Shown: one piece after another, positions 1 to 12,072 of the stretch
Numbering within the stretch: position 1 is the stretch's first letter
Layout: each line of letters begins with the position of its first letter
Virus record (IMG/VR): IMGVR_UViG_3300036770_007495
Span: 62,001-126,000 of that record
DNA length: 64,000 nt
Strand: one strand, 5' to 3'
Made by a program: the position numbers and the translations under genes
The notes under the pieces: generated by a model
Seen by the model: only the letters and a program-made list of their open reading frames with translations
Told to the model about the DNA's origin: nothing
Databases searched by the model: none

Positions 1-58
1 AGATTAGCGTCTGCCTGAAGAGCAGAAAAGACTGGAGCGTTACCAGTAGCAGCCACCA
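1..58 (+). tRNA. tRNA-Phe(GAA), 5' end outside window
   Basis: ctgc-ctGAAga-gcag; T-arm actgg-agcgtta-ccagt; ACCA. Confidence 0.8.
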
Positions 59-62
59 TTTC

Positions 63-151
63 GGGACCTGCCCCCATCAGCGGACTGTAAATCCGTTGCC
101 ATTAATAAGATGGGAAGTTGGCAAGTGGTGCGTTACCACCAGGGCCCACCA
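63..151 (+). tRNA. tRNA-Tyr(GTA), D-arm-rewired
   Basis: gggacct/agggccc+ACCA; gcgga-ctGTAaa-tccgt; no D hairpin; cccatc 73-78 pairs gatggg 109-114. Confidence 0.75.
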
Positions 152-306
152 TTTCAAGTTGGAGATGACGCGCTGTGTTGTCTTTAAAACGCTAACCAAC
201 AAGAACAAACTAGTAATGCCGCTAGTATATACAAAGGCAGTCCTCATCACCTTATGGTGCTGATATGGCTTCTTTTTCCGTGAGCCCGTTAATCACGGAA
301 TATTTT

Positions 307-397
307 GGAGAGAGCCCGGCTAGACGAGGAGCAATCTTGGAAAGATTGTAACACTTCGAAAGAGGTGTTAAGGGTGCGAGTCCCTTTCTCTCCTCCA
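307..397 (+). tRNA. tRNA-Ser(GGA)
   Basis: ggagaga/tctctcc; caatc-ttGGAaa-gattg; long V arm; CCA. Confidence 0.85.
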
Positions 398-403
398 TTT
401 TAT

Positions 404-493
404 GGGCAGTTAACTAGACAAGCGCGCTGGGACCGACTTGAAATCGGATCGAGGTCGAAAGGCCTTGGGGTGCAAGCCCTCAGCTGCCCGCCA
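404..493 (+). tRNA. tRNA-Ser(TGA)
   Basis: gggcagt/gctgccc+GCCA; ccga-ctTGAaa-tcgg; long V arm. Confidence 0.85.
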
Positions 494-499
494 TTTTAT

Positions 500-574
500 G
501 CGGATATAATTCAGTGGTAGAATATCTCGTTGCCAACGAGAGTGTCGTCGGTTCAAATCCGACTATCCGCTCCA
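500..574 (+). tRNA. tRNA-Gly(GCC)
   Basis: canonical cloverleaf, TCCA. Confidence 0.95.
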
Positions 575-579
575 ATTAA

Positions 580-643
580 CCGTAGTGGAGAATCTACGGC
601 ATAACAAAATCTCTTAGATTGCAGAAACCTAACAAAACGCTGC
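580..643 (+). ncRNA. two tandem small H-type pseudoknots
   Basis: ccgtag/ctacgg with loop gaga pairing tctc; ttag/ctaa with loop gcag pairing ctgc; A-rich linkers. Confidence 0.45.
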
Positions 644-655
644 GCCTATTTCAAA

Positions 656-732
656 CGGGATGTAGCTCAGCCTGGTAGAGCGCTTGCTTTGGGAGCAAGA
701 TGTCGTCGGTTCGAATCCGGCTATCCCGACCA
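656..732 (+). tRNA. tRNA-Pro(TGG)
   Basis: canonical cloverleaf, ACCA. Confidence 0.95.
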
Positions 733-734
733 AT

Positions 735-816
735 TTTGCGGAGCAGAAATGCTAGTGTGCGGCCGAAAGACTGATGATGCGGCGTTTCGGGTAAAACCTC
801 GCGATCATCTCGCAAA
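735..816 (+). ncRNA. structured RNA, unknown
   Basis: tttgcg/cgcaaa closing stem, gca-gaaa-tgc, gatgat/atcatc. Confidence 0.35.
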
Positions 817-822
817 TTTAGA

Positions 823-924
823 TGTGGGTGAAAGTCCCAGAAGCATCACAGATGCTTGTTCCACGACGGGCTCTAAAGACTTGAACTGACAAGTGCAAGG
901 GTGAGTGTAAAGGTACTCCCCACA
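823..924 (+). ncRNA. multi-hairpin structured RNA
   Basis: tgtggg/cccaca; aagcatc/gatgctt; acttg/caagt; gagtg/tactc. Confidence 0.45.
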
Positions 925-934
925 AATTTCAAAT

Positions 935-1009
935 GCGGTGTAGATGTTAATGGCTGCACACCTGACTTCCAATCAGAAGGAGGGGGTTCGATTCCCCCAC
1001 ACCGCACCA
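935..1009 (+). tRNA. tRNA-Gly(TCC)
   Basis: ctga-ctTCCaa-tcag; TTCGATT T-loop; ACCA. Confidence 0.9.
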
Positions 1010-1013
1010 ATTT

Positions 1014-1234
1014 TATCAGAAGGAAGTTGGCTTAGAAGCAGCCATCTATAATGAGTGAAGCGAAGTACGAGTCTCCAACATCAACGGCCTAGTAAGGTGA
1101 CTGTGATAATGCATGATGTATCAGAGTCAGATATTGGCTCATGCGTTGGATATCGTCTGACTGCGGATAGTAAAAGAGCACCCCGTAAATGGTAAGGCTT
1201 AATTCTTCTTAGGCGTAACAGCACACCTCTGATA
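1014..1234 (+). ncRNA. 23S rRNA H43/H44 (uL11-binding site) mimic with internal insertion
   Basis: GGAAGTTGGCTTAGAAGCAGCCATC 1022-1046 and GCGTAACAGC 1213-1222, closed by tatcaga/tctgata. Confidence 0.75.
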
Positions 1235-1242
1235 TATTTTAA

Positions 1243-1336
1243 GGATCCATGACAGAGCCTGGTATTGTACGTCCCTGCTAAGGACAGGTCAGCCCCTAAA
1301 AAGGCTGCGTAGGTTCAAATCCTACTGGATCCGCCA
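1243..1336 (+). tRNA. tRNA-Ser(GCT)
   Basis: ggatcca/tggatcc+GCCA; long V arm. Confidence 0.9.
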
Positions 1337-1374
1337 TTTTGTTGCTTTAAATCGTTCATGAGATAAATCACGTT

Positions 1375-1800
1375 ATGAATGAAATTGAACAACTTAAATC
1401 AGAGTTTGAAGAACTCAAAAATGCACAACAAGAAACAATCTTTGAAGACCACAACATTGTGGGTGATGCAGAATCATATGTTGGTTCATTGAACAGTGGT
1501 CTAAAAGAGCTAGTTAATCACTACGTGATGGATTATCTCATCATCATGAATGCGTTAAAGTTCATGACTGGCCCAGTTGCTTGCTATCAAGGCAAAGCAA
1601 TTGAGGCACAAACAATCAAGTTTGAAACAATGAAAGAGTTGAGAGACTTTCTCAAAGACAAACAATATTTGCTGTATGTAATTGTTGCACATGCAAGTGT
1701 TACATATGAAGAAGTGGAATGGACTAAAACAATGGCACCTAATGCTAAAACAATTGGTGCAAAAATTTCATACCTCTTTAGAGGTCATATTCTAGAGTAA
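1375..1800 (+). CDS. hypothetical protein
   Basis: 141-aa ORF filling the gap between tRNAs. Confidence 0.75.
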   Translation: MNEIEQLKSEFEELKNAQQETIFEDHNIVGDAESYVGSLNSGLKELVNHYVMDYLIIMNALKFMTGPVACYQGKAIEAQTIKFETMKELRDFLKDKQYLLYVIVAHASVTYEEVEWTKTMAPNAKTIGAKISYLFRGHILE

Positions 1801-1808
1801 TTTCAATT

Positions 1809-1885
1809 CGGGTGGTGTCTGGACAAGTAAACGAACTCGGTTTGGAGTCGAGTAAATGTGGGAGCGTTACCCACTCACCCGACCA
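1809..1885 (+). tRNA. tRNA-Pro(TGG), divergent second copy
   Basis: cgggtgg/tcacccg+ACCA; ctcgg-ttTGGag-tcgag. Confidence 0.75.
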
Positions 1886-1889
1886 ATTT

Positions 1890-2312
1890 ATGAGTACAAA
1901 GCATCAAGGGGATATCTCTGAAGCTTATGCAATAGCAAAATTCTTAGAGTTAGGATTTGTAGTAGCAAAGCCAGTAGGAGACAATCAGAGATATGATCTT
2001 ATCATTGATAGAGGCAATGGATTTGAACGAGTTCAAATAAAAACAGGTACACATTCTACTGGATGTGTAGTTGCATATACAAGATCTGTGTACAATAATA
2101 CAAAACAGTCAAAAGTTGTTGGATACAAAATATCGGAAATTGATCTAATTGCAGTAGTTGTTCACAATACTAAATGTGTTTATTTGTTGCAAAGCAAAGA
2201 ATTCACTGAGGATAATAGTGACAACGTAAAGAAAACCATCTACCTTAGAATTGATCCACCGAGAAACAATCAAATAAAAAAAGTTAAATGGGCAAAGGAA
2301 TACGTCATTTAA
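1890..2312 (+). CDS. free-standing PD-(D/E)XK endonuclease (group I intron-associated, I-Ssp6803I-like)
   Basis: GDISE...PVGDNQRYDLIID...RVQIKTG; start moved to ATG after tRNA-Pro. Confidence 0.8.
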   Translation: MSTKHQGDISEAYAIAKFLELGFVVAKPVGDNQRYDLIIDRGNGFERVQIKTGTHSTGCVVAYTRSVYNNTKQSKVVGYKISEIDLIAVVVHNTKCVYLLQSKEFTEDNSDNVKKTIYLRIDPPRNNQIKKVKWAKEYVI

Positions 2313-2313
2313 T

Positions 2314-2389
2314 ACACGAGAAGGCACCACGGTTGGGCCGGTAGGTTGTTACCCTATTGAACTTGGTTCGATCCCAAGCTCGTGTGCCA
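2314..2389 (+). tRNA. tRNA-Asn(GTT), atypical
   Basis: acacgag/ctcgtgt+GCCA; gtagg-ttGTTac-cctat. Confidence 0.7.
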
Positions 2390-2398
2390 ATTTCAAAT

Positions 2399-2474
2399 GC
2401 TCCAGTAGCTCAATTAGAAGAGCGGTCGCCCGATTAGCGATAGGTTGTAGGTGCAAGTCCTACCTGGAGTACCA
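2399..2474 (+). tRNA. tRNA-Ile(GAT) with C33
   Basis: tcgc-ccGATta-gcga; ACCA. Confidence 0.8.
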
Positions 2475-2487
2475 ATTTCAAGAATGT

Positions 2488-2528
2488 TAGTGGTTAGGAG
2501 GATAACCACTAGAGAAAACACCTCCCCA
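2488..2528 (+). ncRNA. H-type pseudoknot (GGAGG loop / CCTCC tail)
   Basis: 9-bp tagtggtta/taaccacta, loop ggagga, cctcc 9 nt downstream, then CCA. Confidence 0.55.
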
Positions 2529-2537
2529 ATTTCAAAT

Positions 2538-2612
2538 GGACTGCGAGCTTGTGTGGATAAGCAATCGGCTTTTAACCGATAGAACAGGGTTCGAATCCCT
2601 GGCGGTCTACCA
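2538..2612 (+). tRNA. tRNA-Lys(TTT)
   Basis: atcgg-ctTTTaa-ccgat; ACCA. Confidence 0.9.
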
Positions 2613-2620
2613 ATTTCAAT

Positions 2621-2697
2621 GCCCATGTAGCCCAATTGGTAGAGGCGTATGACTTAGGATCATAATGTTGGGGGTTCGAATCCCTCTATGGGTACCA
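2621..2697 (+). tRNA. tRNA-Leu(TAG), short variable loop
   Basis: tatga-ctTAGga-tcata; ACCA. Confidence 0.85.
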
Positions 2698-2705
2698 ATT
2701 TATAT

Positions 2706-2785
2706 GGGCATGTATACCCTCGCGCTACGGACGCGTTGAAAGGTTAATTAGAAACATGCGGGTGCAACTCCTGCCATGCCCACCA
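2706..2785 (+). tRNA. tRNA-Arg(ACG), D-arm-rewired
   Basis: gggcatg/catgccc+ACCA; cgcg-ctACGga-cgcg; ggtt-AATTAGA after the anticodon arm. Confidence 0.75.
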
Positions 2786-2793
2786 TTTCAAAT

Positions 2794-2877
2794 ACACTAG
2801 CAGCAAGTGGTGGTTGCGGGTTCTCTCCAAAAGAACTGTTTTTACTAAAGTGGGTTCGATTCCTACCTAGTGTGCCA
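2794..2877 (+). tRNA. tRNA-Trp(CCA), enlarged variable region
   Basis: acactag/ctagtgt+GCCA; gttct-ctCCAaa-agaac. Confidence 0.8.
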
Positions 2878-2888
2878 TAAATATATAC

Positions 2889-3773
2889 ATGAGTGTCATT
2901 TATAATGTTGACCAATACAATCAAAGTAAAAGCATAAGTGCTAAAATAGGTGTATTGTGTCCATGTTGTACCAATTGGTTTGAGACAACTAGACTGCTGT
3001 TACAGCGAGCGTTAAAGTCTAACAGACTAAAATTTTGCTCTATAAAGTGTGCAAATAAATTTCAATCAGAAAAGATACAGCTTGAATGTGTTTTCTGCAA
3101 ACAACAAATAGAGAGAGTTGCAAGTCAACTTAAAAATGTAAAACATGTATTTTGTAATCACTCTTGTGCAGCGCAATTTAACAACAGCTTAAGACCTAAA
3201 AAGTTAAAACAACCAAAGAAAGCTAAACCTGTAGCAAAAGTTGTTGAGCACATTTGTATTAATTGTGGAAAAATATCCATTGTTTCTGCTCGTGCTAGTC
3301 TCAAAAAGAAATTTTGTTCTGGCAGTTGCAGAAACGTAATCAATAATAAAACCATAAGAGGTACGCGATCGAAAGTAGAGAAAGAGTTTGAATTAGCAAT
3401 TAAAGCAAATTTTCCAGATTTGAAGTTTAATTGCAATGACAGACAAATTCTTGATGGGTTGGAGCTTGATTTTTACTTTCCTGAAATTAATCTAGCAATA
3501 GAATTTAACGGTATATGGCATTTAAAACCAATACGTGGAGAAGAACTTTTAGTAAAATACAAACAAAGAGACAAACACAAAAAACGCTTATGTGAAGAGA
3601 AAAATATTAAACTTTTAGTGCTTTGTGATGAAGCTAGTTCCAACAAATCAATTGATGAGCAAGTACATAAAGCAATTGCGTTTTTAAAACAATTTCAACA
3701 TGCTTCAGAAGCTACAGTAGACGGGCCGCTCCCTCTTAAGGAGAATATTTGTGTGGTTGCAACTACCACCTGA
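2889..3773 (+). CDS. free-standing Vsr/DUF559-like endonuclease with N-terminal Cys-rich zinc repeats
   Basis: repeated CxxC..FCSxxC; LELDFYFPEINLAIEFNGIWH. Confidence 0.8.
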   Translation: MSVIYNVDQYNQSKSISAKIGVLCPCCTNWFETTRLLLQRALKSNRLKFCSIKCANKFQSEKIQLECVFCKQQIERVASQLKNVKHVFCNHSCAAQFNNSLRPKKLKQPKKAKPVAKVVEHICINCGKISIVSARASLKKKFCSGSCRNVINNKTIRGTRSKVEKEFELAIKANFPDLKFNCNDRQILDGLELDFYFPEINLAIEFNGIWHLKPIRGEELLVKYKQRDKHKKRLCEEKNIKLLVLCDEASSNKSIDEQVHKAIAFLKQFQHASEATVDGPLPLKENICVVATTT

Positions 3774-3780
3774 AGCACCA
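3702..3780 (+). tRNA. tRNA-Lys(CTT)
   Basis: gcttcag/ctgaagc+ACCA; ctcc-ctCTTaa-ggag. Confidence 0.75.
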
Positions 3781-3787
3781 ATTTAAT

Positions 3788-3863
3788 GCTCCGTAAGCAG
3801 ATATAGTGATGCGGCTCTCTTGTAAAGAGCAGACAGGGGGTGCAAGTCCCTCACGGAGCTCCA
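3788..3863 (+). tRNA. tRNA-Thr(TGT)
   Basis: gctct-ctTGTaa-agagc; TCCA. Confidence 0.85.
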
Positions 3864-3963
3864 TTTAAGGAAGTATCAGCTGAGGTGGACGCTCTGCGGA
3901 GAAGTGTTACTTGTGCAAGAAAGCTAAACGAACGCTTTCCAGCTAGCTTCCAACAATTTCAAT

Positions 3964-4037
3964 AGCTCCTTAGCATAAAAGTAATGCATCTGGCTTTGAC
4001 CCAGATGAAGTTGGCGCAATACCAGCAGGAGCTGCCA
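3964..4037 (+). tRNA. tRNA-Gln(TTG)
   Basis: tctgg-ctTTGac-ccaga; GCCA. Confidence 0.85.
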
Positions 4038-4042
4038 TTTTT

Positions 4043-4225
4043 ATGAAAACAGCAATTGATTTAAAAGAATATTTGAGTCAAAACTCTTTAACAGATGTAT
4101 TTGAAGAACCTGTCAAAGTTTTAATTCAAATGGAAGACGATACTTATAAACATTGTACAATATGCACAATGGCATATGTTTGGTCTGGTGAAAGTGAAGC
4201 ACAAAAATGCCTTATAATAGGTTGA
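4043..4225 (+). CDS. small hypothetical protein
   Basis: 60-aa ORF between tRNAs. Confidence 0.6.
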   Translation: MKTAIDLKEYLSQNSLTDVFEEPVKVLIQMEDDTYKHCTICTMAYVWSGESEAQKCLIIG

Positions 4226-4237
4226 ATATTTTCAAAA

Positions 4238-4312
4238 TGCTCTCGGAAGGTAAGATCTTGAACTGTCTCATAAGCAGTTATAAAGTGGGTGCAATCCCCA
4301 CGGGAGCGACCA
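4238..4312 (+). tRNA. tRNA with CAT anticodon (elongator Met or Ile2)
   Basis: actgt-ctCATaa-gcagt; reduced D arm; ACCA. Confidence 0.7.
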
Positions 4313-4352
4313 ATTTAAGGAAATTCAATATAATAAGAGAGTAAATTTAAAA

Positions 4353-4430
4353 GTCCCTGTAGTTAACGGAAGGCTATAACATCGCCCTTTCACGGCGAAA
4401 TACCCGGTTCGACCCCGGGTGGGGATGCCA
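4353..4430 (+). tRNA. tRNA-Glu(TTC)
   Basis: tcgcc-ctTTCac-ggcga; GCCA. Confidence 0.9.
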
Positions 4431-4444
4431 AAACAATTTCAAAT

Positions 4445-4518
4445 GACCCTGTAGATTAATAGTAAATCGCCACGCTTTCAACGTGAAGACGACGGAGCAT
4501 AACCGTCCTGGGTTGCCA
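4445..4518 (+). tRNA. tRNA-Glu(TTC), second copy
   Basis: cacg-ctTTCaa-cgtg; GCCA. Confidence 0.8.
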
Positions 4519-4527
4519 ATTTCAAAT

Positions 4528-4605
4528 AGAGCCGAAGTCAAACAGCATTGACGCTCGCCTGTCGAGCGAGATATAAAGTGGGGGCAGCACCCACCGGCTC
4601 TGCCA
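4528..4605 (+). tRNA. tRNA-Asp(GTC)
   Basis: ctcgc-ctGTCga-gcgag; GCCA. Confidence 0.85.
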
Positions 4606-4614
4606 ATTTCAAAT

Positions 4615-4693
4615 TCACGGGTAGTTTATTTTTGGGTAAAACAACCTTGGCATGCAAGGGAGAAGGGTGTTCAAATCACTCGCCTGTGAGCCA
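4615..4693 (+). tRNA. tRNA-like gene with non-canonical anticodon loop (ggCATgc)
   Basis: acceptor, D and T arms and CCA present; no U33. Confidence 0.55.
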
Positions 4694-4701
4694 ATTTCAA
4701 A

Positions 4702-4775
4702 CCTCCTGTAGCTCAAAGGTAGAGCTCTCGGTTGATAACCGAAGGACGTAGGATCGTTACCTGCCAGGAGGACCA
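4702..4775 (+). tRNA. tRNA-Ile(GAT)
   Basis: tcgg-ttGATaa-ccga; ACCA. Confidence 0.85.
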
Positions 4776-4784
4776 ATTTCAAAA

Positions 4785-4860
4785 GCCCCTATAGCCCAAC
4801 AGCAGAGGCAATACGTTAAGGGCGTATTCAGTGCAGGTGCAAATCCTGCTAGGGGCACCA
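4785..4860 (+). tRNA. tRNA-Leu(AAG), short variable loop
   Basis: atacg-ttAAGgg-cgtat; ACCA. Confidence 0.8.
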
Positions 4861-4865
4861 ATTTT

Positions 4866-5048
4866 ATGAAAATAATTGTCAGCACAGAACAAGAAAAGAT
4901 TGCTTTATTAAAAGCTTCAAAATACATTCATGATCTAAAATGTTTAGATACAAGCGATGATGCTGTTAATACAATAGCTCATTTGTATTGTGCACCATTT
5001 TTAATTGAAGTTGATCCTAATTTAAAAATTTCAGTTGAACAACAATAG
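4866..5048 (+). CDS. small hypothetical protein
   Basis: 60-aa ORF between tRNAs. Confidence 0.6.
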   Translation: MKIIVSTEQEKIALLKASKYIHDLKCLDTSDDAVNTIAHLYCAPFLIEVDPNLKISVEQQ

Positions 5049-5077
5049 GAAAGAGTATATAATGTTGTAGATAAAAA

Positions 5078-5153
5078 TCCCAAGTAGCTCAGCGGTAGTA
5101 GCGAGTGGCTGTTAACCACTAGGTCGCTGGTTCGATCCCAGCCTTGGGAGCCA
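5078..5153 (+). tRNA. tRNA-Asn(GTT)
   Basis: canonical cloverleaf, GCCA. Confidence 0.95.
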
Positions 5154-5163
5154 TTTTCAAAAT

Positions 5164-5237
5164 TGCAGGTAGGTGGTCTAGTGACCATTCTGGGCTCATA
5201 ACCCGGAGAGCGTGGTGCGATTCCCGGCCTGCTACCA
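5164..5237 (+). tRNA. initiator tRNA-fMet(CAT)
   Basis: GGG/CCC at the base of the anticodon loop, 1-72 mismatch, ACCA. Confidence 0.8.
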
Positions 5238-5246
5238 TTTTTTAAG

Positions 5247-5274
5247 TTGATAAAGACAAACAATACGCTATAAT
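5247..5274 (+). promoter_or_regulatory. sigma70-type promoter
   Basis: TTGATA-16 bp-TATAAT, 6 nt before ATG 5281. Confidence 0.6.
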
Positions 5275-5280
5275 AATAAC

Positions 5281-5469
5281 ATGAATACATACGAACAATT
5301 GAAGGAGCTTGTAGAAGCATTTGCCATTGAAGACGAAAAGTTCAATAATGGCAAGTCGTCTGCAAGTACAAATGCACGTAAGCGTTTACAAGATATTATT
5401 GTGCTTGCAAAGACTCGTCGCAACGAAATTACGGCTGAGAAGAATGCACGCAAGCAAGCAAAAGCTTAA
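5281..5469 (+). CDS. histone H1-like (Hc1-family) small basic protein
   Basis: EKFNNGKSSASTNARKRLQDI..LAK..R.EI pattern. Confidence 0.7.
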   Translation: MNTYEQLKELVEAFAIEDEKFNNGKSSASTNARKRLQDIIVLAKTRRNEITAEKNARKQAKA

Positions 5470-5481
5470 GCGTAGTAATTA

Positions 5482-5557
5482 GCCCGGTTAGCTCAGCGGT
5501 AGTAGCGCCTCCTTTACACGGAGATTGTCGGCGGTTCGATCCCGTCACCGGGTACCA
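5482..5557 (+). tRNA. tRNA-Val(TAC)
   Basis: canonical cloverleaf, ACCA. Confidence 0.95.
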
Positions 5558-5563
5558 GTTTAT

Positions 5564-5638
5564 GGGGCTCTAGTGCTAGCGGTAACACGTCGCCTTTGCA
5601 CGGCGAAGTTTGGGGTTCGACTCCCCAGAGCTCCACCA
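5564..5638 (+). tRNA. tRNA-Ala(TGC)
   Basis: G3:U70 pair; ACCA. Confidence 0.95.
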
Positions 5639-5647
5639 ATTTCTAAA

Positions 5648-5734
5648 TGATCGGCGTCTGAAATGTATAAAGCCGGATAACCCGCGGAGATTGGGTCGGA
5701 TGAGATTAATAATGACGAGTATACCCGGTCACCA
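5648..5734 (+). ncRNA. CCA-ending RNA with an acceptor-like stem but no cloverleaf
   Basis: tgatcgg/ccggtca+CCA; gtata/tatac. Confidence 0.45.
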
Positions 5735-5736
5735 AT

Positions 5737-5878
5737 TCCTCGGTAGTGTAATGGTGCAACGGTCAGCAGCGAAAGATCGGGTCTTCCTTAAGGGTCTGCA
5801 GCAAACAGACCAAACAGGCGAATCTTAGCGAATGTCTGCGGACAACAGGTGTTGGTTCGAATCCAACCTGAGGACACA
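5737..5878 (+). ncRNA. tRNA-shaped RNA with the anticodon arm replaced by a large domain
   Basis: tcctcgg/ctgagga; D-like tagtgtaatggtgcaac; perfect T arm gttgg-ttcgaat-ccaac. Confidence 0.6.
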
Positions 5879-5880
5879 TT

Positions 5881-6082
5881 TTGATAGCAAGGAAAGACGC
5901 AGTTCGCGGGTAATGAGAAAGCAATGAGTGGGGCCGGGTTGGTCAATGGGCTGCAAATGATTGCAACGTCTGCAGCGAGCACCAACTGGACGGAAGCATT
6001 GCAAAGTGTAGATTACAAATGGAGAATGGGCAAGGAGGCTGGGTCTACCAGCATTAACTCCCCGATACCTCACCAGCTATCA
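5881..6082 (+). ncRNA. ~200-nt structured RNA
   Basis: ttgatagc/gctatcaa closing; gcaatg/cattgc; gttggt/accaac; gctgca/tgcagc; gctgg/ccagc. Confidence 0.55.
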
Positions 6083-6086
6083 ATTT

Positions 6087-6225
6087 CAGAACATTCAATC
6101 AACCGCAACACAGAGGTCGATCTTGCAAGCCGAGTACCTCTGACGGCTCTGATAACAGGTGCGCTTGCACAAGCCTTGCGAATGGTTCTGCATGCACCAG
6201 CTGAATTAGCTACTCAGTGTGGTGC
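6087..6225 (+). ncRNA. structured RNA
   Basis: cagaac/gttctg; cagaggt/acctctg; gcacca/tggtgc. Confidence 0.45.
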
Positions 6226-6237
6226 TAAATTTTCTAT

Positions 6238-6312
6238 GGACGTTGAGCCAGCTGGCGTGGGCGGAAGTCTGCAAAACTTCTTAGGTGGGTTCGATTCTCA
6301 CAACGTCCTCCA
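6238..6312 (+). tRNA. tRNA-Cys(GCA)
   Basis: gaagt-ctGCAaa-acttc; U73; CCA. Confidence 0.9.
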
Positions 6313-6337
6313 ATTCTAGTACGCGTATCCGGCGCGA

Positions 6338-6404
6338 GGCTCGTCGCTGGTTAATTCTAGACACCTGGTCTTCCAACGTCGCAGGTGAAGTTAACGAGCC
6401 GCCA
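6338..6404 (+). ncRNA. T-armless tRNA-like RNA
   Basis: ggctcgt/acgagcc+GCCA; ctgg/ctag; cacctg/caggtg. Confidence 0.5.
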
Positions 6405-6408
6405 ATTT

Positions 6409-6837
6409 ATGAAAACAAAAATGCTGATATTTGGTTTGCCGGGATCCGGCAAAACCACTCTTGCAAAAAAGTTAGTTGGTGCAGTTGCTGACTCTATGCA
6501 CATCAATGCTGATGCAGTTAGAAGTGCAGTTGATGATTGGGATTTTTCGCAACAAGGCCGCATTCAACAAGCACATAGAATGCATCAATTGAGTGAAGCA
6601 AGCAATGCTGCTCTTGTAGTTTGTGACTTTGTCTGTCCTTACCAAAGCACAAGAGATGCATTGTTCAATGATTACTTTCAAGTGTTCATGGATACCATCA
6701 AGAGCAGCAGATTTGCTGATACAGATGCAATTTTTGAACATGTCAATTATTGTGATTTTCGAATTACAAATTTTGACCAAACAGAAATTTTTATCAAATT
6801 CATTGTTGATTTAGTTGTAAAACCATCCATTGTATAA
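6409..6837 (+). CDS. adenylylsulfate kinase-like P-loop kinase
   Basis: GLPGSGKTT, NADAVR, WDFS..GR, DFVCP. Confidence 0.75.
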   Translation: MKTKMLIFGLPGSGKTTLAKKLVGAVADSMHINADAVRSAVDDWDFSQQGRIQQAHRMHQLSEASNAALVVCDFVCPYQSTRDALFNDYFQVFMDTIKSSRFADTDAIFEHVNYCDFRITNFDQTEIFIKFIVDLVVKPSIV

Positions 6838-6856
6838 GAGTAAATAAACAACAAAA

Positions 6857-6939
6857 GCCCCGGTAGCGGATCCGCCTTCTAAGCGGAGCATTGTACCGTA
6901 ATTGGACGCATACAGGTTCGAGTCCTGTTCGGGGTACCA
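6857..6939 (+). tRNA. tRNA-Arg(TCT), D-arm-rewired
   Basis: gccccgg/tcggggt+ACCA; tccgc-ctTCTaa-gcgga; gcgg 6866-69 pairs ccgt 6896-99 followed by AATTGGA. Confidence 0.8.
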
Positions 6940-6950
6940 CTTTTCAAAAA

Positions 6951-7027
6951 TCCCTGCGTATCATAATTAGCTAATGTCCTCGCCTGTGAAGCGAGCTAAG
7001 ACGGGGCAGAACCGTCCCAGGGAACCA
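6951..7027 (+). tRNA. tRNA-His(GTG) lacking G-1:C73
   Basis: ctcgc-ctGTGaa-gcgag; ACCA. Confidence 0.75.
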
Positions 7028-7030
7028 TTT

Positions 7031-7215
7031 CCGGAATAGTTGCAAACGAGGGTTCGAAACCTCAAATAGCATCTAACAGAGATTCAAAGCATCGAAGTTT
7101 ATAGGTTGAACGGGACCCTGACAGGTTGATGGTGTGTTCGAGTGCACACGTGCTTTGAGTCTCGATAATTTATCTGGCTGTTGCAATGAGGTAAAGACCC
7201 AACGCAATGCCAAAT
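7031..7215 (+). ncRNA. structured RNA with T-loop-like hairpins
   Basis: gagattcaaagca/tgctttgagtctc; gagg-gttcgaaa-cctc; gtgtg-ttcgagtg-cacac. Confidence 0.45.
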
Positions 7216-7369
7216 AGTCCAAAAAGTAAAAGTAAAATATTCATAGGGGCTGCGTTCTCAAAACTATGGCAAAGATTTTGCTATAGCAATGAAAATAACA
7301 GCAATGCATGAAATTCCAAAAAACATGTGGATTATTTCATAGAAGTTCATATAGTTATTTAGTCAAAAT

Positions 7370-7457
7370 GCTGGTGTGGCTGAGCGGTCTAAAGCACTTG
7401 CCTTGTAAGCAAGCGGGAGTGATCCCATCGTCAGTTCGAATCTGACCACCAGCTCCA
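7370..7457 (+). tRNA. tRNA-Thr(TGT) with long variable arm
   Basis: cttgc-ctTGTaa-gcaag; V arm ggga-gtga-tccc. Confidence 0.85.
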
Positions 7458-7463
7458 TTTTCC

Positions 7464-7742
7464 ATGAACAATCGTAGATCATTCTTCAAAAGCCTCATTG
7501 GCTTGATCGTTGCACCAAAGGTTGCTGAAGCTCTACCAACAGAAGCTCCAATACCATCAATTCCTGTATATGCTCCAATGAGGAGATTAAGGGCTAATTG
7601 GTCAATTGAAGTGGAGCAAGATCTTATGCGTATGCATGGCATAGACCTTGATGCAATGCTATTAACAAATATGTCAAAAGCAATTCAGGAAGAAATTGAT
7701 AATGACATGGTAAAAAAATTAACAAAGAAAATGGGGAGTTAG
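7464..7742 (+). CDS. Tat-like signal fused to a major-capsid-protein fragment
   Basis: NRRSFFK; C-terminal half aligns to gp23 of this window. Confidence 0.75.
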   Translation: MNNRRSFFKSLIGLIVAPKVAEALPTEAPIPSIPVYAPMRRLRANWSIEVEQDLMRMHGIDLDAMLLTNMSKAIQEEIDNDMVKKLTKKMGS

Positions 7743-7806
7743 TATAGAAGCAGTACATTGGCTCGACACGCCAAAGAAGAAGGAGCGTTACCTTCACTCC
7801 CTACCA
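7733..7806 (+). tRNA. tRNA-Val(GAC)
   Basis: ttggc-tcGACac-gccaa; ACCA. Confidence 0.8.
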
Positions 7807-7807
7807 T

Positions 7808-7882
7808 GGTTCCTAAGCATAGATAGCGATGCACACGATTGGTATTTGTGATAGAGGAGTGCAAATCTCCTAGGAACCTCCA
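7808..7882 (+). tRNA. tRNA-Thr(GGT)
   Basis: cacga-ttGGTat-ttgtg; TCCA. Confidence 0.8.
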
Positions 7883-7924
7883 CTCATCGCAGACAACACA
7901 TAAAATGCATGTATGTGAAGCAAC

Positions 7925-8011
7925 TAATAAAAAAACAATGTAGTTGCAAATAGCGAAGTTGAGATTAAAATAATGCACAAGAGCAAGATAAAGCTCAATG
8001 ATCTTTGAAAA
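7925..8011 (+). promoter_or_regulatory. rRNA-like promoter plus boxA-like antiterminator
   Basis: A-tract, TTGCAA-16 bp-TAAAAT, TGATCTTTGAAAA at 7999-8011. Confidence 0.55.
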
Positions 8012-8014
8012 ATT

Positions 8015-8420
8015 CCGTGGTGGCAGAACAATGGGTCGCCAGCCCATAATGCACTAAGCAACGTCTGAAAAGACGCCAGGTAGGTTGAAGAAGTTGTGCC
8101 GGATAAAGCTGAAATAGCCAAGGTTGGCTAACCTTGAGTGACGTAAGAAGACAACAAATCGCAATAATCTTGCTGATGGCTGTATTGTCTTGGAGATAAC
8201 CATTCCTCCCTATCATTAACAGTGAGAGTAATTAACTCATTGGATAGTGGCTGAATAATCCGACACAATGGAGGCTTGTGAGTAGTCAGGAATCTCACCC
8301 ACACTAATTTTGGCTAACGAATTCTGTATGCCACCTCCCGTAACCAATGGAAAAATTACAGAATGCGTTTGTGGGAGTCGCAGAAACCTTCAGTAATTTT
8401 CAACAATCTCGCAAGAGGAT
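8015..8420 (+). ncRNA. large ornate ncRNA candidate (GOLLD/ROOL-class)
   Basis: many complementary segments incl. ggtggca/tgccacc, ttgtgccggat/atccgacacaa, cccaca/tgtggg, attctgta/tacagaat; no credible ORF. Confidence 0.6.
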
Positions 8421-8441
8421 AAAAAGGAAACACACATACAC

Positions 8442-8657
8442 ATGAATAAAAACGCATATGAAATTCGCTTGGAAGTTCTTGGAATGGCTCATGGCACCGT
8501 CTGGAGCCTGTACCATGAAAAGCTCAATGCAATGAGAATCAATGCTGATAAAGCAAATCAGTTCTTTGATGAGACATTGGTTGACAAGCTTGCGCCTAGC
8601 GCAAAGGACGTTTTGTCTTATGCTGCTGAACTCTATGAGTTCGTAGAAGGCAAATAA
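8442..8657 (+). CDS. small hypothetical phage protein
   Basis: AAGGA upstream; MNKNAYEIRLEVL..A...LYEFV pattern typical of T4-like phages. Confidence 0.75.
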   Translation: MNKNAYEIRLEVLGMAHGTVWSLYHEKLNAMRINADKANQFFDETLVDKLAPSAKDVLSYAAELYEFVEGK

Positions 8658-8705
8658 AGTCAAAGTGGTGCTGGATAACCACATTAAACACCAGCTATTT
8701 TCAAT

Positions 8706-8801
8706 GCTCCAGTAGCTCAATTGGTAGAGCGGAAGGCTTATACCCTTCGTATGCACCAGATTAGTGCGCGGTTGTCGGTTCGAGCCCGGCCTGGAGTACC
8801 A
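8706..8801 (+). tRNA. tRNA-Ile(TAT) with long variable arm
   Basis: gaagg-ctTATac-ccttc; canonical D and T arms; ACCA. Confidence 0.85.
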
Positions 8802-8809
8802 TTTTACAT

Positions 8810-9265
8810 ATGAGATTTGAAGGAAAAAAAGTGATTGTTGCAAGTGGATATTTTGACCCACTGCACATTGGTCATGTTGAATATCTCAAACTAGCAAGAA
8901 TGCTGGGTGATATGCTGGTAGTCATTGTCAACAATGACAAGCAAGCTGCTCTCAAAAAAGGAAAATCATTCATGTCTGAAAATGACAGATGGCGCCTTGT
9001 GGGTGAACTCAAATGTGTGGATATTCCAGTTCTCTCCATTGACGATGGTGCATCTGTATCTGATACAATTCAAATGCTTGTAGACAAAGGTTTCAATCCT
9101 GCCATCTTTGCCAAAGGTGGTGATAGATTCAGCAATGAAATACCTGAAGCACAGGTGTGCAGAGAGCATGGTATTCAAATCGTGGATGGTCTTGGAGACA
9201 AGATTAGATCATCATCAGAATTAGTTTCCAACGCATATGAAAGTAGATTACAAATTTGTCCCTAA
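8810..9265 (+). CDS. cytidylyltransferase-family protein (TagD/RfaE-II-like)
   Basis: SGYFDPLHIGH; KGGDR; SSS. Confidence 0.85.
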   Translation: MRFEGKKVIVASGYFDPLHIGHVEYLKLARMLGDMLVVIVNNDKQAALKKGKSFMSENDRWRLVGELKCVDIPVLSIDDGASVSDTIQMLVDKGFNPAIFAKGGDRFSNEIPEAQVCREHGIQIVDGLGDKIRSSSELVSNAYESRLQICP

Positions 9266-9590
9266 AGGATGGGGGTTTGAAAAGTGGATTTGCAACAATG
9301 AAAAATATTGCGGCAAATTGCTCTTCATTGCCAAAGATAAGAAGATTTCTTGGCATTATCACAAACTCAAGGATGAACATTTTTACATCAACAAAGGTTC
9401 AGTAATAGTCCTTTATGGTGACAATAAAAATATCAATTTAGCTACATCTGAAATTCTGAAGCAAGGTGATGTATTTCATGTTCCAGTTGGAATGATTCAC
9501 AGATTAATTGCTTTAGAAGATACAGAGGTATTTGAATTTTCGACTCAACATTTTGACGAAGATTCTATCAGAGTGGAAAAAGGTGATTGA
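9237..9590 (+). CDS. cupin-domain protein (sugar isomerase-like)
   Basis: KGWG.E.W, SWHYHKLKDE, G..HR, EFST. Confidence 0.8.
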   Translation: MKVDYKFVPKGWGFEKWICNNEKYCGKLLFIAKDKKISWHYHKLKDEHFYINKGSVIVLYGDNKNINLATSEILKQGDVFHVPVGMIHRLIALEDTEVFEFSTQHFDEDSIRVEKGD

Positions 9591-9592
9591 AT

Positions 9593-9668
9593 GGCCAAGT
9601 GACGGAATGGCATACGTATCGGTCTCAAAAACCGAGTTCTGTGGGTTCGACTCCCACCTTGGCTACCA
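9593..9668 (+). tRNA. tRNA-Leu(CAA), short variable loop
   Basis: tcggt-ctCAAaa-accga; ACCA. Confidence 0.85.
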
Positions 9669-9679
9669 TAAATATACAG

Positions 9680-12044: not shown

Positions 12045-12072
12045 AAGGTTATTTAGTCTGCTAAATACAATT

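What the first reader, a model, noticed from the sequence alone, without database searches (positions are those of the whole stretch)
1..7882. Array-wide elbow swap G18:U55 to A18:G55
Seen: tRNAs with T-loop NGC (e.g. 307, 404, 1809, 2399, 3702, 3788, 3964, 4445, 4528, 4785, 5164, 6951, 7733, 7808) carry AG rather than GG in the D-loop, while those with U55 (500, 656, 935, 1243, 2538, 2621, 5078, 5482, 5564, 6238, 7370, 8706, 9593) keep GG. Several also replace U54 (AGCGTTA, GGCAGCA). Established: G18-Psi55 is near universal and U54/U55 are TrmA/TrmFO and TruB targets. Inference: a selected alternative elbow, independent of modification or evading elbow-reading defence enzymes, not decay. Pro and Glu each have one copy of each type.
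Basis: partly seen in the sequence, partly recalled or inferred. Interest (0 to 1): 0.7.

Follow-up and report, generated by a model that had tools for sequence, protein, structure and literature searches.

The report
Phage tRNAs with a swapped elbow
About half of the roughly 38 tRNA genes in this jumbo phage's array replace the near-universal G18/U55 elbow contact with A18/G55, always together; the same alternative elbow turns up in tRNA arrays and even housekeeping tRNAs of Verrucomicrobia and Planctomycetes, so it is a working second way to build a tRNA, not decay.

Summary
The array runs from 16 bases before the window to 9668. It holds 18 units with a G55 T-loop (NGC) and 20 with U55. Among the 29 regular cloverleaves, all 13 G55 units have A18-G19 and all 16 U55 units have G18-G19 (Fisher 1.5e-8).

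Eight related phage contigs give 42 A18:G55, 66 G18:U55, 2 ambiguous and no A18:U55. A tree built without the elbow columns shows 18 coordinated switches. Eleven anticodon families carry both states. Pairs 19:56 and 54:58 also covary. G55 tRNAs keep their stems by compensatory changes, and relatives' arrays are transcribed in metatranscriptomes.

The G55 loops (UGCAA, CGCAA, GGCAG) match the generic T-loop class of riboswitches and rRNA, where an adenosine intercalates and bonds to G at loop position 2. The swap is therefore a change of T-loop class that keeps the G19:C56 face.

The elbow is not phage-specific. At least 30 of 151 Verrucomicrobiales genomes carry almost pure A18:G55 arrays. Some Planctomycetota use it for tRNA-Thr in the EF-Tu operon. 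One Anabaena array tRNA-Ile has it, and that tRNA is reported as charged. The selective reason (modification independence, nuclease evasion) is untested. I found no published description.

The parts
1..58 (+). G55 type: tRNA-Phe(GAA). The 5' end lies 16 nt before the window. T-loop AGCGTTA, D-loop AGATAGAT.
63..151 (+). G55 type, irregular: tRNA-Tyr(GTA)-like with a long extra arm. T-loop TGCGTTA. There is no normal D-arm; CCCATC can pair with GATGGG in the extra arm.
   Evidence: read from the sequence
307..397 (+). G55 type: tRNA-Ser(GGA), long variable arm. T-loop TGCGAGT, D region CTAGACG.
404..493 (+). G55 type: tRNA-Ser(TGA), long variable arm. T-loop TGCAAGC, D region GACAAGCGCG.
500..574 (+). 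U55 type: tRNA-Gly(GCC). TTCAAAT / AGTGGTA.
656..732 (+). U55 type: tRNA-Pro(TGG). TTCGAAT / AGCCTGGTA.
935..1009 (+). U55 type: tRNA-Gly(TCC). TTCGATT / TAATGGCT.
1243..1336 (+). U55 type: tRNA-Ser(GCT). TTCAAAT / AGCCTGGTA.
1809..1885 (+). G55 type: tRNA-Pro(TGG). AGCGTTA (A54, U58) / GACAAGTAA.
2314..2389 (+). U55 type: tRNA-Asn(GTT). TTCGATC / CCACGGTTG.
2399..2474 (+). G55 type: tRNA-Ile(GAT). TGCAAGT / AATTAGAA.
2538..2612 (+). U55 type: tRNA-Lys(TTT). TTCGAAT / GTGTGGAT.
2621..2697 (+). U55 type: tRNA-Leu(TAG). TTCGAAT / AATTGGTAG.
2706..2785 (+). G55 type, irregular: Arg(ACG)-like unit. T-loop TGCAACT. A D-loop-like segment AATTAGAAA lies 3' of the anticodon arm.
2794..2877 (+). U55 type: tRNA-Trp(CCA) with a 13-nt variable region. 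TTCGATT / GTGGTGGT.
3702..3780 (+). G55 type: tRNA-Lys(CTT). TGCAACT / CAGTAGAC.
3788..3863 (+). G55 type: tRNA-Thr(TGT). TGCAAGT / ATATAGTG.
3964..4037 (+). G55 type: tRNA-Gln(TTG). CGCAATA (C54) / AAAAGTA.
4238..4312 (+). G55 type: tRNA with anticodon CAT. TGCAATC / TAAGAT.
4353..4430 (+). U55 type: tRNA-Glu(TTC). TTCGACC / ACGGAAGGCTA. Its homologue in relative G012 is G55 type (GGCAGCG / ACGATCAGTTA) with the same D- and T-stems.
4445..4518 (+). G55 type: tRNA-Glu(TTC). AGCATAA (A54, U58) / AATAGTA.
4528..4605 (+). G55 type: tRNA-Asp(GTC). GGCAGCA (G54, G58) / AACAGCAT.
4615..4693 (+). U55 type, irregular: unit with anticodon CAT. TTCAAAT / ATTTTTGGGTA. G33, and one extra base after the T-stem.
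4702..4775 (+). U55 type with the 54:58 pair swapped: tRNA-Ile(GAT). ATCGTTA / AAAGGTA. It keeps GG, so 18:55 and 54:58 vary independently.
4785..4860 (+). G55 type: tRNA-Leu(AAG). TGCAAAT / AACAGCAG.
5078..5153 (+). U55 type: tRNA-Asn(GTT). TTCGATC / AGCGGTAG.
5163..5237 (+). G55 type, weak: Met(CAT)-like unit. T-loop TGCGATT, D-loop TCTAGTGA. Only 3 of 5 T-stem pairs form.
5482..5557 (+). U55 type: tRNA-Val(TAC). TTCGATC / AGCGGTAG.
5564..5638 (+). U55 type: tRNA-Ala(TGC). TTCGACT / TAGCGGTA.
5737..5876 (+). U55 type, irregular: tRNA-like unit with an insert of about 65 nt and no CCA. T-loop TTCGAAT, D-loop AATGGT.
   Evidence: read from the sequence
6238..6312 (+). U55 type: tRNA-Cys(GCA). 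TTCGATT / GCTGGCGT. Relatives G001 and G002 carry a G55-type Cys (TGCGATA / GCTAGTGA).
6857..6939 (+). U55 type, irregular: Arg(TCT)-like unit. TTCGAGT. A TAATTGGAC segment lies 3' of the anticodon arm.
6951..7027 (+). G55 type: tRNA-His(GTG). GGCAGAA (G54, G58) / TAATTAGCTA.
7370..7457 (+). U55 type: tRNA(TGT) with a 16-nt variable arm. TTCGAAT / AGCGGTCTA.
7733..7806 (+). G55 type: tRNA-Val(GAC). AGCGTTA / AGAAGCA.
7808..7882 (+). G55 type: tRNA-Thr(GGT). TGCAAAT / AGATAGCG. Its T-stem changes by compensatory pairs in G004 and G002.
8706..8801 (+). U55 type: tRNA-Ile(TAT) with a 25-nt variable region. TTCGAGC / AATTGGTA.
9593..9668 (+). U55 type: tRNA-Leu(CAA). TTCGACT / AATGGCAT. Last gene of the array.
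1890..2312 (+). PD-(D/E)XK endonuclease gene inside the array. It may be a homing-type nuclease, as seen beside other long tRNA arrays.
   Evidence: PF11645, 5e-33

Best explanation
The window opens with a long tRNA gene array of a 225-kb jumbo phage with T4-like head genes. The likely host belongs to the Planctomycetes-Verrucomicrobia-Chlamydiae (PVC) superphylum. The array mixes two structural classes of working tRNA. One class has the textbook elbow: G18-G19 in the D-loop and U54-U55-C56-R57-A58 in the T-loop. The other class has switched to the generic T-loop type known from riboswitches, rRNA and RNase P. In that type the loop is Y-G-N-R-A (here UGCAA, UGCGA, CGCAA, plus GGCAG and AGCRU variants), and the base that slides between loop positions 4 and 5 is an adenosine bonded to the sugar edge of the G at loop position 2. 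In tRNA numbering this is A18 with G55. G19:C56, whose flat outer face is what the ribosome, RNase P and other partners stack on, is kept. Single changes at 18 or 55 are harmful, so the two positions are only ever seen changed together. These tRNAs come from a pool of such tRNAs shared by PVC bacteria (chromosomal long arrays, some core genes) and their phages. Shown here: the co-variation, its repetition on the tree, selection on the cloverleaf, transcription, and the wide distribution. Inferred: the exact A18-G55 geometry, that every G55 unit is charged and used in translation, and any benefit. Possible benefits are no need for pseudouridine-55 or m5U54, no need for CCA addition, or escape from enzymes that read the T-loop.
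For: 1. Strict association. In this genome the split is 13 versus 16 with none mixed, p 1.5e-8. In eight related contigs it is 42 A18:G55, 66 G18:U55, 2 ambiguous and 0 A18:U55; the register-free GG-presence test gives p 3e-24 and the position-18 rule p 2e-28.
2. Independent events. On a tree built without the D-, T- and variable-loop columns, each trait needs 18 parsimony changes. All 18 independent pairs (6 on supported branches) go the same way. Eleven anticodon families hold both states. Glu-TTC switched both loops while keeping identical D- and T-stems.
3. Other elbow pairs covary. A56 occurs with G18-U19 and U56 with G18-A19 in the phages. On the G55 background, one bacterial tRNA-Pro has U56 with A18-A19. 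The 54:58 pair occurs as U:A, A:U, G:G and C:A.
4. Selection on structure. G55-type ortholog pairs show 46 two-sided compensatory changes, 34 pair-keeping changes and 8 pair-breaking changes. U55-type pairs show 97, 20 and 5.
5. Structural precedent. FMN and cobalamin riboswitch T-loops are UGNRA (88.7%) or CGNRA (10.9%). The intercalating base is A in 99.96% and bonds to the sugar edge of the position-2 G. An rRNA T-loop reads GGAAG (bioRxiv 10.1101/2022.12.26.521914).
6. Expression. In metatranscriptome X17, contigs of close relatives cover 3796-4543 at depth 524-1265. The portal gene is at 0-2.6 and the capsid gene at 130-2900.
7. Same elbow in cells. All 30 fetched Verrucomicrobiales array loci contain G55 tRNAs: 158 G55 units with AG only and 21 U55 units with GG. 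It also occurs in tRNA-Thr genes of the thr-tyr-gly-thr cluster, in one genome directly upstream of EF-Tu, in Planctomycetota. The Anabaena array tRNA-Ile(GAT) has GGCAGTA / AAAAGTG, and operonic tRNA-Ile-GAU is reported as detected and aminoacylated in vivo (PMC8421152).
8. Single mutations at G18-U55, G19-C56 or U54-A58 are not tolerated in yeast SUP4oc (PMC4117946).
Against: No structure, chemical probing, tRNA sequencing or charging data exist for any tRNA of this phage. Positions 18/19 were assigned by a rule of mine, because neither alignment method put them in single columns. Two units read AAGG and are ambiguous. Several G55 units are irregular (63-151, 2706, 5163) and may not be ordinary decoders. 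RNA-library depth is a contig-wide mean from relatives, and standard RNA-seq sees precursors rather than mature tRNA. AGCRU loops (A54, U58) are not covered by the cited T-loop consensus. The link between the Anabaena tRNA-Ile of the paper and the gene I found rests on it being the only GAT-anticodon cloverleaf in that array.
Confidence: 0.8

Rival explanations
1. Adaptive insulation. The A18:G55 elbow (with A, G or C at 54 and an encoded CCA) was selected because it makes these tRNAs independent of, or invisible to, host enzymes that read the T-loop. Candidates are TruB, TrmA, TrmH, the CCA-adding enzyme, and T-loop-cutting toxins or defence nucleases. A phage or a mobile array could then keep translation going when host tRNAs are damaged or maturation is limiting.
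For: G55 cannot be isomerised to pseudouridine, and A54, G54 or C54 cannot be methylated to m5U (chemistry). All array tRNAs encode CCA, and the phage has no CCA-adding enzyme. The bacterial long arrays are almost purely G55 type while most core tRNAs of the same genomes are canonical, which suggests a separate pool. Long arrays are reported to be induced under translational stress in Anabaena (PMC8421152). From my own recollection, not checked here: a Burkholderia CdiA toxin cuts between positions 54 and 55.
Against: Nothing here tests resistance or modification. Half of the phage's own tRNAs keep the canonical elbow. Some Planctomycetota use A18:G55 for core tRNA-Thr genes, which points to an ordinary, tolerated solution. 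The Anabaena stress-induced array is almost entirely canonical. No elbow-reading defence system is known in these hosts.
Confidence: 0.25
2. Near-neutral alternative spread by descent. The two elbows work equally well. A18:G55 arose rarely in the PVC lineage, spread by gene duplication, anticodon change and recombination among arrays and phages, and is kept only because single reversions are harmful.
For: It is present in core tRNAs, chromosomal arrays and phages of one superphylum. Both types sit side by side with the same trailer motif. G55-type phage tRNAs have no match among 50,697 GenBank phages, whereas a query spanning the whole array matched more than 1300 records, with the listed hits falling on canonical tRNAs. 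That fits a lineage-restricted pool.
Against: The tree needs about 18 switches within one phage clade. Homologous Glu tRNAs differ in both loops only. A single G55-type tRNA occurs in a cyanobacterial array. So the state is gained or exchanged repeatedly. The near-purity of the bacterial arrays is hard to explain without some pressure for uniformity.
Confidence: 0.4
3. The G55 units are decaying pseudogenes or tRNA-like decoys that do not take part in translation.
For: ARAGORN with default settings misses 12 of 18, and several score below or near the Rfam threshold. A few units are irregular (63-151, 2706, 5163).
Against: Acceptor and T-stems are perfect and CCA is encoded. U33 and a purine at 37 are kept in nearly all. 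Stem evolution is compensatory. 18:55 co-varies strictly. For Phe, Tyr, Gln, Asp, His, Lys-CTT, Leu-AAG, Val-GAC and Thr-GGT the only phage copy is G55 type. The same type sits in the tuf operon of Planctomycetota.
Confidence: 0.04

Closest known systems
Generic T-loop motif with an intercalating adenosine (FMN and cobalamin riboswitches, rRNA, RNase P; consensus YGNRA)
   Same: The five-base loop reads U/C-G-N-R-A. Two bases are flipped out after it. A distal adenosine sits between positions 4 and 5 and bonds to the G at position 2. The rRNA variant GGAAG resembles the phage GGCAG.
   Different: Here the motif sits in a tRNA T-arm and the adenosine comes from the D-loop, next to a G19:C56 Watson-Crick pair. 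AGCRU loops (A54, U58) are not part of that consensus. No structure has been solved for these tRNAs.
[quoted passage not shown] 2021, PMC8421152; Tran et al. 2016, PMC4758250)
   Same: Dozens of same-strand tRNA genes in a few kilobases. They are supernumerary, spread horizontally and have a nuclease gene nearby. They are reported in Verrucomicrobia and Planctomycetes. In Anabaena they are charged and found on polysomes.
   Different: Neither paper contains the words T-loop, D-loop, G18 or U55. The Anabaena array is canonical except for one tRNA-Ile. The PVC arrays found here are almost entirely A18:G55.
Phage tRNA sets that differ from host tRNAs to escape anticodon nucleases (T4, T5, mycobacteriophages); recalled from my own knowledge, not checked here
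   Same: Phage-borne tRNA arrays supply decoders whose sequence differs from the host's at sites an enzyme reads.
   Different: The known cases change the anticodon loop, not the elbow. No nuclease is implicated here.
Natural tRNAs without the G18G19/T-Psi-C signature: tRNA-Pyl and animal mitochondrial tRNAs (PMC7609411)
   Same: They depart from the near-universal elbow nucleotides yet work in translation.
   Different: Those tRNAs lose or rebuild the D-loop/T-loop contact, with small D-loops and no G19:C56. The tRNAs here keep normal loop sizes and G19:C56, and change one contact in a coordinated way across most isoacceptors.

Membership tests
tRNA (Rfam RF00005 cloverleaf) | 7-bp acceptor stem, discriminator base and 3' CCA | tested here: met
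   All listed units have 6-7 of 7 acceptor pairs and an encoded CCA, except 5737-5876.
tRNA (Rfam RF00005 cloverleaf) | 5-bp T-stem with a 7-nt loop, anticodon arm with U33 and a purine at 37, D-arm of 3-4 bp | tested here: met
   Met for 29 regular units. Irregular units: 63-151, 2706, 4615, 5163, 5737 and 6857. C33 occurs in 2399 and 7733.
tRNA (Rfam RF00005 cloverleaf) | G18-G19 in the D-loop and U54-U55-C56 in the T-loop | tested here: not met
   18 units have A18 and G55, and 8 of them also lack U54. G19 and C56 are kept. The 20 other units meet the feature.
tRNA (Rfam RF00005 cloverleaf) | Score above the Rfam gathering threshold (29 bits) | tested here: inconclusive
   7 G55 units pass (42-56 bits) and 10 do not reach the list at all; the truncated first unit passes only in the whole-genome search (44.6 bits). 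My own model R1 recovers nearly all.
YGNRA T-loop with intercalating adenosine | Loop positions 1-5 read Y-G-N-R-A, followed by two extra bases | tested here: met
   Met by 11 of 18 units (UGCAA, UGCGA, CGCAA). GGCAG (2 units) resembles the rRNA loop GGAAG. AGCGU/AGCAU (4 units) and UGCGU (1 unit) fall outside the consensus.
YGNRA T-loop with intercalating adenosine | An adenosine from a distal element intercalates between positions 4 and 5 and bonds to G at position 2 | not testable with these tools
   Co-variation (A18 whenever G55) fits this. No 3D model or probing was available.
Long tRNA gene array (L-array) | 20 or more tRNA genes on one strand at 2 or more per kb | tested here: met
   About 38 units in 9.7 kb, all on the + strand.
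Long tRNA gene array (L-array) | Carried on mobile DNA, with a nuclease gene nearby | tested here: met
   The record is a phage genome with terminal repeats. A PD-(D/E)XK endonuclease gene lies inside the array. An HNH gene lies beside the bacterial array of G015.
Long tRNA gene array (L-array) | tRNAs expressed and aminoacylated | tested here: inconclusive
   Transcription of relatives' arrays is seen in metatranscriptomes. Charging was not testable.
tRNA pseudogenes | Loss of pairing and of conserved positions without compensation | tested here: not met
   Changes are compensatory (46 and 34 against 8), and 18:55, 19:56 and 54:58 co-vary.

The most novel reading that the evidence does not exclude
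A18:G55 tRNAs form a distinct, mobile second tRNA system of PVC bacteria and their phages. Whole sets of decoders would be built on a riboswitch-type T-loop with encoded CCA, so that they need none of the universal T-loop modification enzymes and are not recognised by factors that read the canonical T-loop. They would be deployed when the housekeeping tRNA pool is attacked or maturation fails. A side possibility is that some units (2706, 6857, 63-151) use a rearranged connectivity in which the D-loop-like strand follows the anticodon arm.
Probability: 0.2. Interest if true: 0.85.

Novelty: new variant of a known kind. Interest (0 to 1): 0.72.

Why it matters
G18-Psi55 is taught as a near-universal tRNA contact, and in a yeast suppressor tRNA no single mutation at either position is tolerated. 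This study found hundreds of natural tRNAs covering most amino acids that replace the contact with A18:G55, in phages, in chromosomal arrays and in a few core genes. That gives a natural experiment on how the elbow can be built. It gives a test bed for what TruB, TrmA and Psi55/m5U54 really contribute. It offers ready-made scaffolds for orthogonal tRNA design. It also warns that default tRNA finders undercount such genes: ARAGORN found 6 of the 18 G55 units here. Finally, it ties this phage clade to PVC hosts and shows that long tRNA arrays in these phyla are structurally distinct from the host's core tRNA set.

Tried and rejected
1. A formal column-wise pair count. MAFFT (A1) and the covariance-model alignment (A2) split the D-loop GG/AG over columns 22, 23 and 25. 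I therefore used my own parser, a register-free GG-present test and a rule blind to position 18, and did not run the count of structure pairs.
2. I first took unit 5163 and the canonical Met-CAT of relative G004 to be the same gene in two states. The model search shows that G004 holds both genes (L042 18678-18753 and 18594-18659), so this pair is not counted as a switch.
3. A more distant relative, G006 (portal 55% identical, 229 kb), has only canonical tRNAs without CCA. It gave no information on the swap.
4. BLAST of G55-type tRNAs (3702-4312) against GenBank phages gave no match.
5. BLAST of the phage tRNAs against the sampled bacterial array tRNAs gave only short matches of 15-42 nt. There is no sign of recent transfer.
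6. The phage genome has no TROVE/Ro60 gene and no CCA-adding enzyme.
7. Literature. 'A18' + 'G55' + tRNA gave nothing relevant. 'Purine trap' gave nothing. The NAR 2003 paper on the 54-58 pair is not held. My memory of laboratory-selected tRNAs with altered D/T loops (Steinberg laboratory) therefore could not be checked and is not used as evidence.
It shows presence in other viral contigs, not frequency.
9. No complex or structure prediction was run. The tools give no verdict for a single RNA.

Full report
WHAT THE WINDOW IS. The window is bases 62001-126000 of a 224,703-bp IMG/VR virus record with direct terminal repeats, estimated complete. It encodes a T4-like portal and major head protein, ribonucleotide reductase and a helicase. 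Just downstream of the tRNA array lie DUF1501, PSCyt2/PSD1 and related genes that are typical of Planctomycetes and Verrucomicrobia. The DUF1501 protein is 59-62% identical to proteins of Verrucomicrobiales and 55-58% identical to those of Pirellulaceae. The host is therefore probably a member of the PVC superphylum. DNA runs holding the sequence or relatives come from subsurface, soil, estuary, lagoon and freshwater samples.

THE ARRAY. A mechanical scan looked for a 5-bp T-stem, a 7-nt loop, a 7-bp acceptor stem and CCA. It finds 33 units on the + strand between 16 bases before the window and 9668, and essentially nothing comparable elsewhere in the window. Relaxed ARAGORN, Rfam, my own covariance model and reading by eye add irregular units at 63-151, 4615, 5163 and 5737. 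The total is about 38. Default ARAGORN finds 23 and Rfam 25. Nearly all units encode CCA. In 30 of 37 the CCA is followed by a T-rich trailer, often ATTTCAAA, shared by both structural classes.

CHECK OF THE OBSERVATION. Eighteen units have G at the second T-loop position (position 55): UGCAA or UGCGA in 10, CGCAA in 1, GGCAG in 2, AGCGU or AGCAU in 4, UGCGU in 1. Twenty have U55. I took position 19 as the last D-loop G followed by 2-4 loop bases, a rule that does not look at position 18. Under it, the 29 regular cloverleaves split 13 A18:G55, 16 G18:U55 and none mixed (Fisher 1.5e-8). The irregular units follow the same pattern. Unit 4702 (Ile-GAT) has A54, U55 and U58 and keeps GG, so 18:55 and 54:58 vary independently.

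RELATIVES AND INDEPENDENCE. A portal search and an exact search with the Val-GAC tRNA brought in seven related contigs. Across the eight records there are 116 unique well-formed tRNAs. Of 71 with U55, 67 have GG in the D-loop. The four exceptions all carry a changed position 56 with a matching change at 19: TTAGATT with TATGTCA, and TTTGAGT or TTTGATT with ..TGAC.. or ..TGAG... Of 44 with G55, 42 have AG and no GG, and 2 read AAGG (Fisher 3e-24). I built a tree from the 52 stem, anticodon-loop and discriminator columns only. On it each trait needs 18 changes. All 18 independent contrasts (6 on supported branches) go the same way, apart from the ambiguous AAGG units. Eleven anticodon families carry both states: Pro, Glu, Asp, His, Gln, Cys, Lys-TTT, Ser-GCT, Ser-TGA, Thr-TGT and Ile-GAT. 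The clearest case is Glu-TTC. The window's 4353 (ACGGAAGGCTA / TTCGACC) and its G012 homologue (ACGATCAGTTA / GGCAGCG) share identical D- and T-stems and differ in the two loops.

ARE THE G55 UNITS REAL tRNAs? Among same-anticodon homologues, G55-type tRNAs show 46 two-sided compensatory stem changes, 34 pair-keeping one-sided changes and 8 breaks. U55-type tRNAs show 97, 20 and 5. The anticodon sets complement each other. For Phe, Tyr, Gln, Asp, His, Lys-CTT, Leu-AAG, Val-GAC and Thr-GGT the phage's only copy is G55 type. Freshwater metatranscriptomes contain contigs 95-99% identical to parts of the array. In run X17 the stretch 3796-4543 (Thr, Met and two Glu genes, three of them G55 type) has depth 524-1265. 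The portal gene has 0-2.6 and the capsid gene 130-2900, so the signal is uneven as expected for RNA rather than carried-over DNA. This shows transcription in relatives. It does not show maturation or charging.

STRUCTURAL READING. A study of T-loops in FMN and cobalamin riboswitches reports the consensus YGNRA (UGNRA 88.7%, CGNRA 10.9%, mostly UGNAA). The intercalating base is adenosine in 99.96% and makes two hydrogen bonds to the sugar edge of the G at position 2. The tRNA type UUCRA and an rRNA type GGAAG are listed as separate classes (bioRxiv 10.1101/2022.12.26.521914). The phage loops UGCAA, UGCGA, CGCAA and GGCAG, combined with A18, fit these classes. So does the shift from G57 to A57. 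I therefore read the swap as a change of T-loop class, not as a new kind of contact. The G19:C56 pair, whose outer face is what the ribosome's L1 stalk, RNase P and T-boxes stack on (PMC4810234), is unchanged. That explains how such tRNAs can still use the common machinery. In yeast SUP4oc no single mutation is tolerated at G18-U55, G19-C56 or U54-A58 (PMC4117946), which explains why only coordinated states are seen. The geometry itself is inferred.

BEYOND THE PHAGE. A covariance model built only from the phage G55 tRNAs (R2) was run on genomes reached through the DUF1501 matches. A 6.3-Mb chromosome (G015) has a compact array of mostly G55-type tRNAs with CCA. In a sample of 151 genomes of its order, 49 have a best hit at E 1e-12 or lower. 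The order includes a genome that NCBI labels Verrucomicrobiales. All 30 loci fetched, from 30 genomes, contain such tRNAs. Of 206 cloverleaves, 158 are G55/C56 with AG only, 5 are G55 with GG, and 21 are U55 with GG. By the position-18 rule on unique sequences the counts are 152 A:G and 20 G:U, with a few C:G and U:G. One array (G131) has 24 of 24 G55-type genes in 3.9 kb. It includes a tRNA-Pro with GGUAG and ..CAAC.., that is A19:U56 on the G55 background. The flanks are ordinary chromosomal genes, with an HNH endonuclease in one case and a TROVE/Ro60 gene in another. No phage genes were seen among the flanking ORFs tested. In a sample of 151 Planctomycetota genomes, 15 have strong hits, and 9 of 12 inspected loci hold G55 tRNAs. 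In five of them these are the tRNA-Thr genes of the conserved thr-tyr-gly-thr cluster, and in one that cluster lies directly upstream of EF-Tu. So some bacteria use this elbow for core tRNAs.

The long array on the Anabaena plasmid is canonical except for tRNA-Ile(GAT), which has GGCAGTA and AAAAGTG and which ARAGORN misses. The published study of that array reports operonic tRNA-Ile-GAU as detected and aminoacylated in vivo, with aberrant gel migration (PMC8421152). An exact-pattern scan of IMG/VR also finds mixed arrays in other viral contigs: 28 G55 units (24 with AG only) and 85 U55 units (82 with GG). In contrast, the G55-type phage tRNAs have no match in 50,697 GenBank phage records, while the canonical tRNAs match more than 1300.

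WHY THE SWAP EXISTS. This is not settled. G55 cannot be pseudouridylated, and A54, G54 or C54 cannot be methylated to m5U. CCA is encoded and the phage has no CCA-adding enzyme. So these tRNAs need less maturation. Escape from enzymes that read the T-loop is possible but has no evidence here. Three facts argue against a phage-specific counter-defence origin: half of the phage's tRNAs are canonical, some bacteria use the elbow in core genes, and the stress-induced Anabaena array is almost all canonical. I put the near-neutral, lineage-spread reading at about 0.4 and adaptive insulation at about 0.25. The two are not exclusive.

NOVELTY. Long tRNA arrays in Verrucomicrobia, Planctomycetes and phages are known (PMC8421152, PMC4758250). 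Those papers do not contain the words T-loop, D-loop, G18 or U55. Reviews of the elbow, of T-loop modifications and of non-canonical tRNAs do not describe an A18:G55 class. A full-text search for A18 with G55 and tRNA finds nothing relevant. I therefore rate it a new variant of a known kind. The library does not hold most subscription journals, so a prior description cannot be excluded.

Noticed in passing
window 2706-2785 and 6857-6939; also G003, G011 and G012 homologues (L043, L053:4037-4120, L054): These are tRNA-like units with perfect acceptor and T-arms but no normal D-arm. A short 5' strand pairs with a strand 3' of the anticodon arm, and a D-loop-like segment follows the anticodon arm (AATTAGAAA with a UGCAA T-loop; TAATTGGAC with a UUCGA T-loop). 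The 18:55 rule seems to hold even in this rearranged layout. Acceptor and D-stem compensatory changes are seen between homologues. The enclosing helix itself shows no variation yet.
   Followed up: partly
window 63-151: A tRNA-Tyr(GTA)-like unit whose 5' CCCATC can pair with GATGGG inside the long extra arm instead of forming a D-arm. Its T-loop is UGCGUUA.
   Followed up: no
window 5737-5876: A tRNA-like unit (acceptor TCCTCGG/CTGAGGA, canonical T-arm, GG in the D-loop) interrupted by about 65 nt. It is the only unit without CCA. A relative's RNA contig carries a similar 3' half.
   Followed up: no
window 8706-8801 and 7370-7457; L045 18641 in relative G006: tRNA-Ile(TAT) carries a 25-nt insertion in the variable region that is conserved even in the distant relative G006. 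A tRNA with anticodon TGT has a 16-nt variable arm like a class II tRNA.
   Followed up: no
window 730-935, 1010-1243, 5640-5730, 5880-6237, 7030-7370 and 7890-8440: Long stretches between tRNA genes have no convincing ORF. Several of them are covered by RNA-library contigs of relatives. There is only a weak, sub-threshold manA RNA hit at 8000-8307 (18.5 bits). They may hold other structured RNAs.
   Followed up: no
window 10465-14633: The phage carries DUF1501 and PSCyt2/PSD1 (DUF1549/DUF1553) genes. These are hallmark families of Planctomycetes and Verrucomicrobia and are probably host-derived. Their best matches are in Verrucomicrobiales at about 60% identity.
   Followed up: partly
L182:14075-15505 (bacterial genome G131), next to a 24-gene A18:G55 array at L182:9055-12990: A TROVE-domain (Ro60-like) gene lies about 1 kb from the array. 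Ro60 partners (Y RNAs) mimic tRNAs, so the adjacency may or may not mean something. The phage itself has no TROVE gene.
   Followed up: partly
L184, L185, L186, L189 and L190 (Planctomycetota genomes): One or both tRNA-Thr genes of the conserved thr-tyr-gly-thr(-tuf) cluster have A18:G55 elbows, while the Tyr and Gly genes between them are canonical.
   Followed up: partly
L149, L153, L162, L168, L176, L181 and L182 (bacterial arrays): tRNA-Arg(TCG) genes have the T-loop CGAAA (A56) with D-loops ending ..TATA, ..TCTA or ..TAGA. tRNA-Phe(GAA) has CGCGC (C54, C58). tRNA-Lys(TTT) has UGCAU (U54, U58). These are further elbow variants not seen in the phage.
   Followed up: no
window 1-9700: In 30 of 37 units the CCA is followed by a T-rich trailer, often ATTTCAAA, shared by both tRNA classes. 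It may be a common 3' processing signal.
   Followed up: partly
window 1890-2312 and 2889-3773: A PD-(D/E)XK endonuclease gene and a 294-aa zinc-finger-rich ORF sit inside the array. RNA contigs of relatives skip these ORFs, so the inserts differ between closely related phages.
   Followed up: partly
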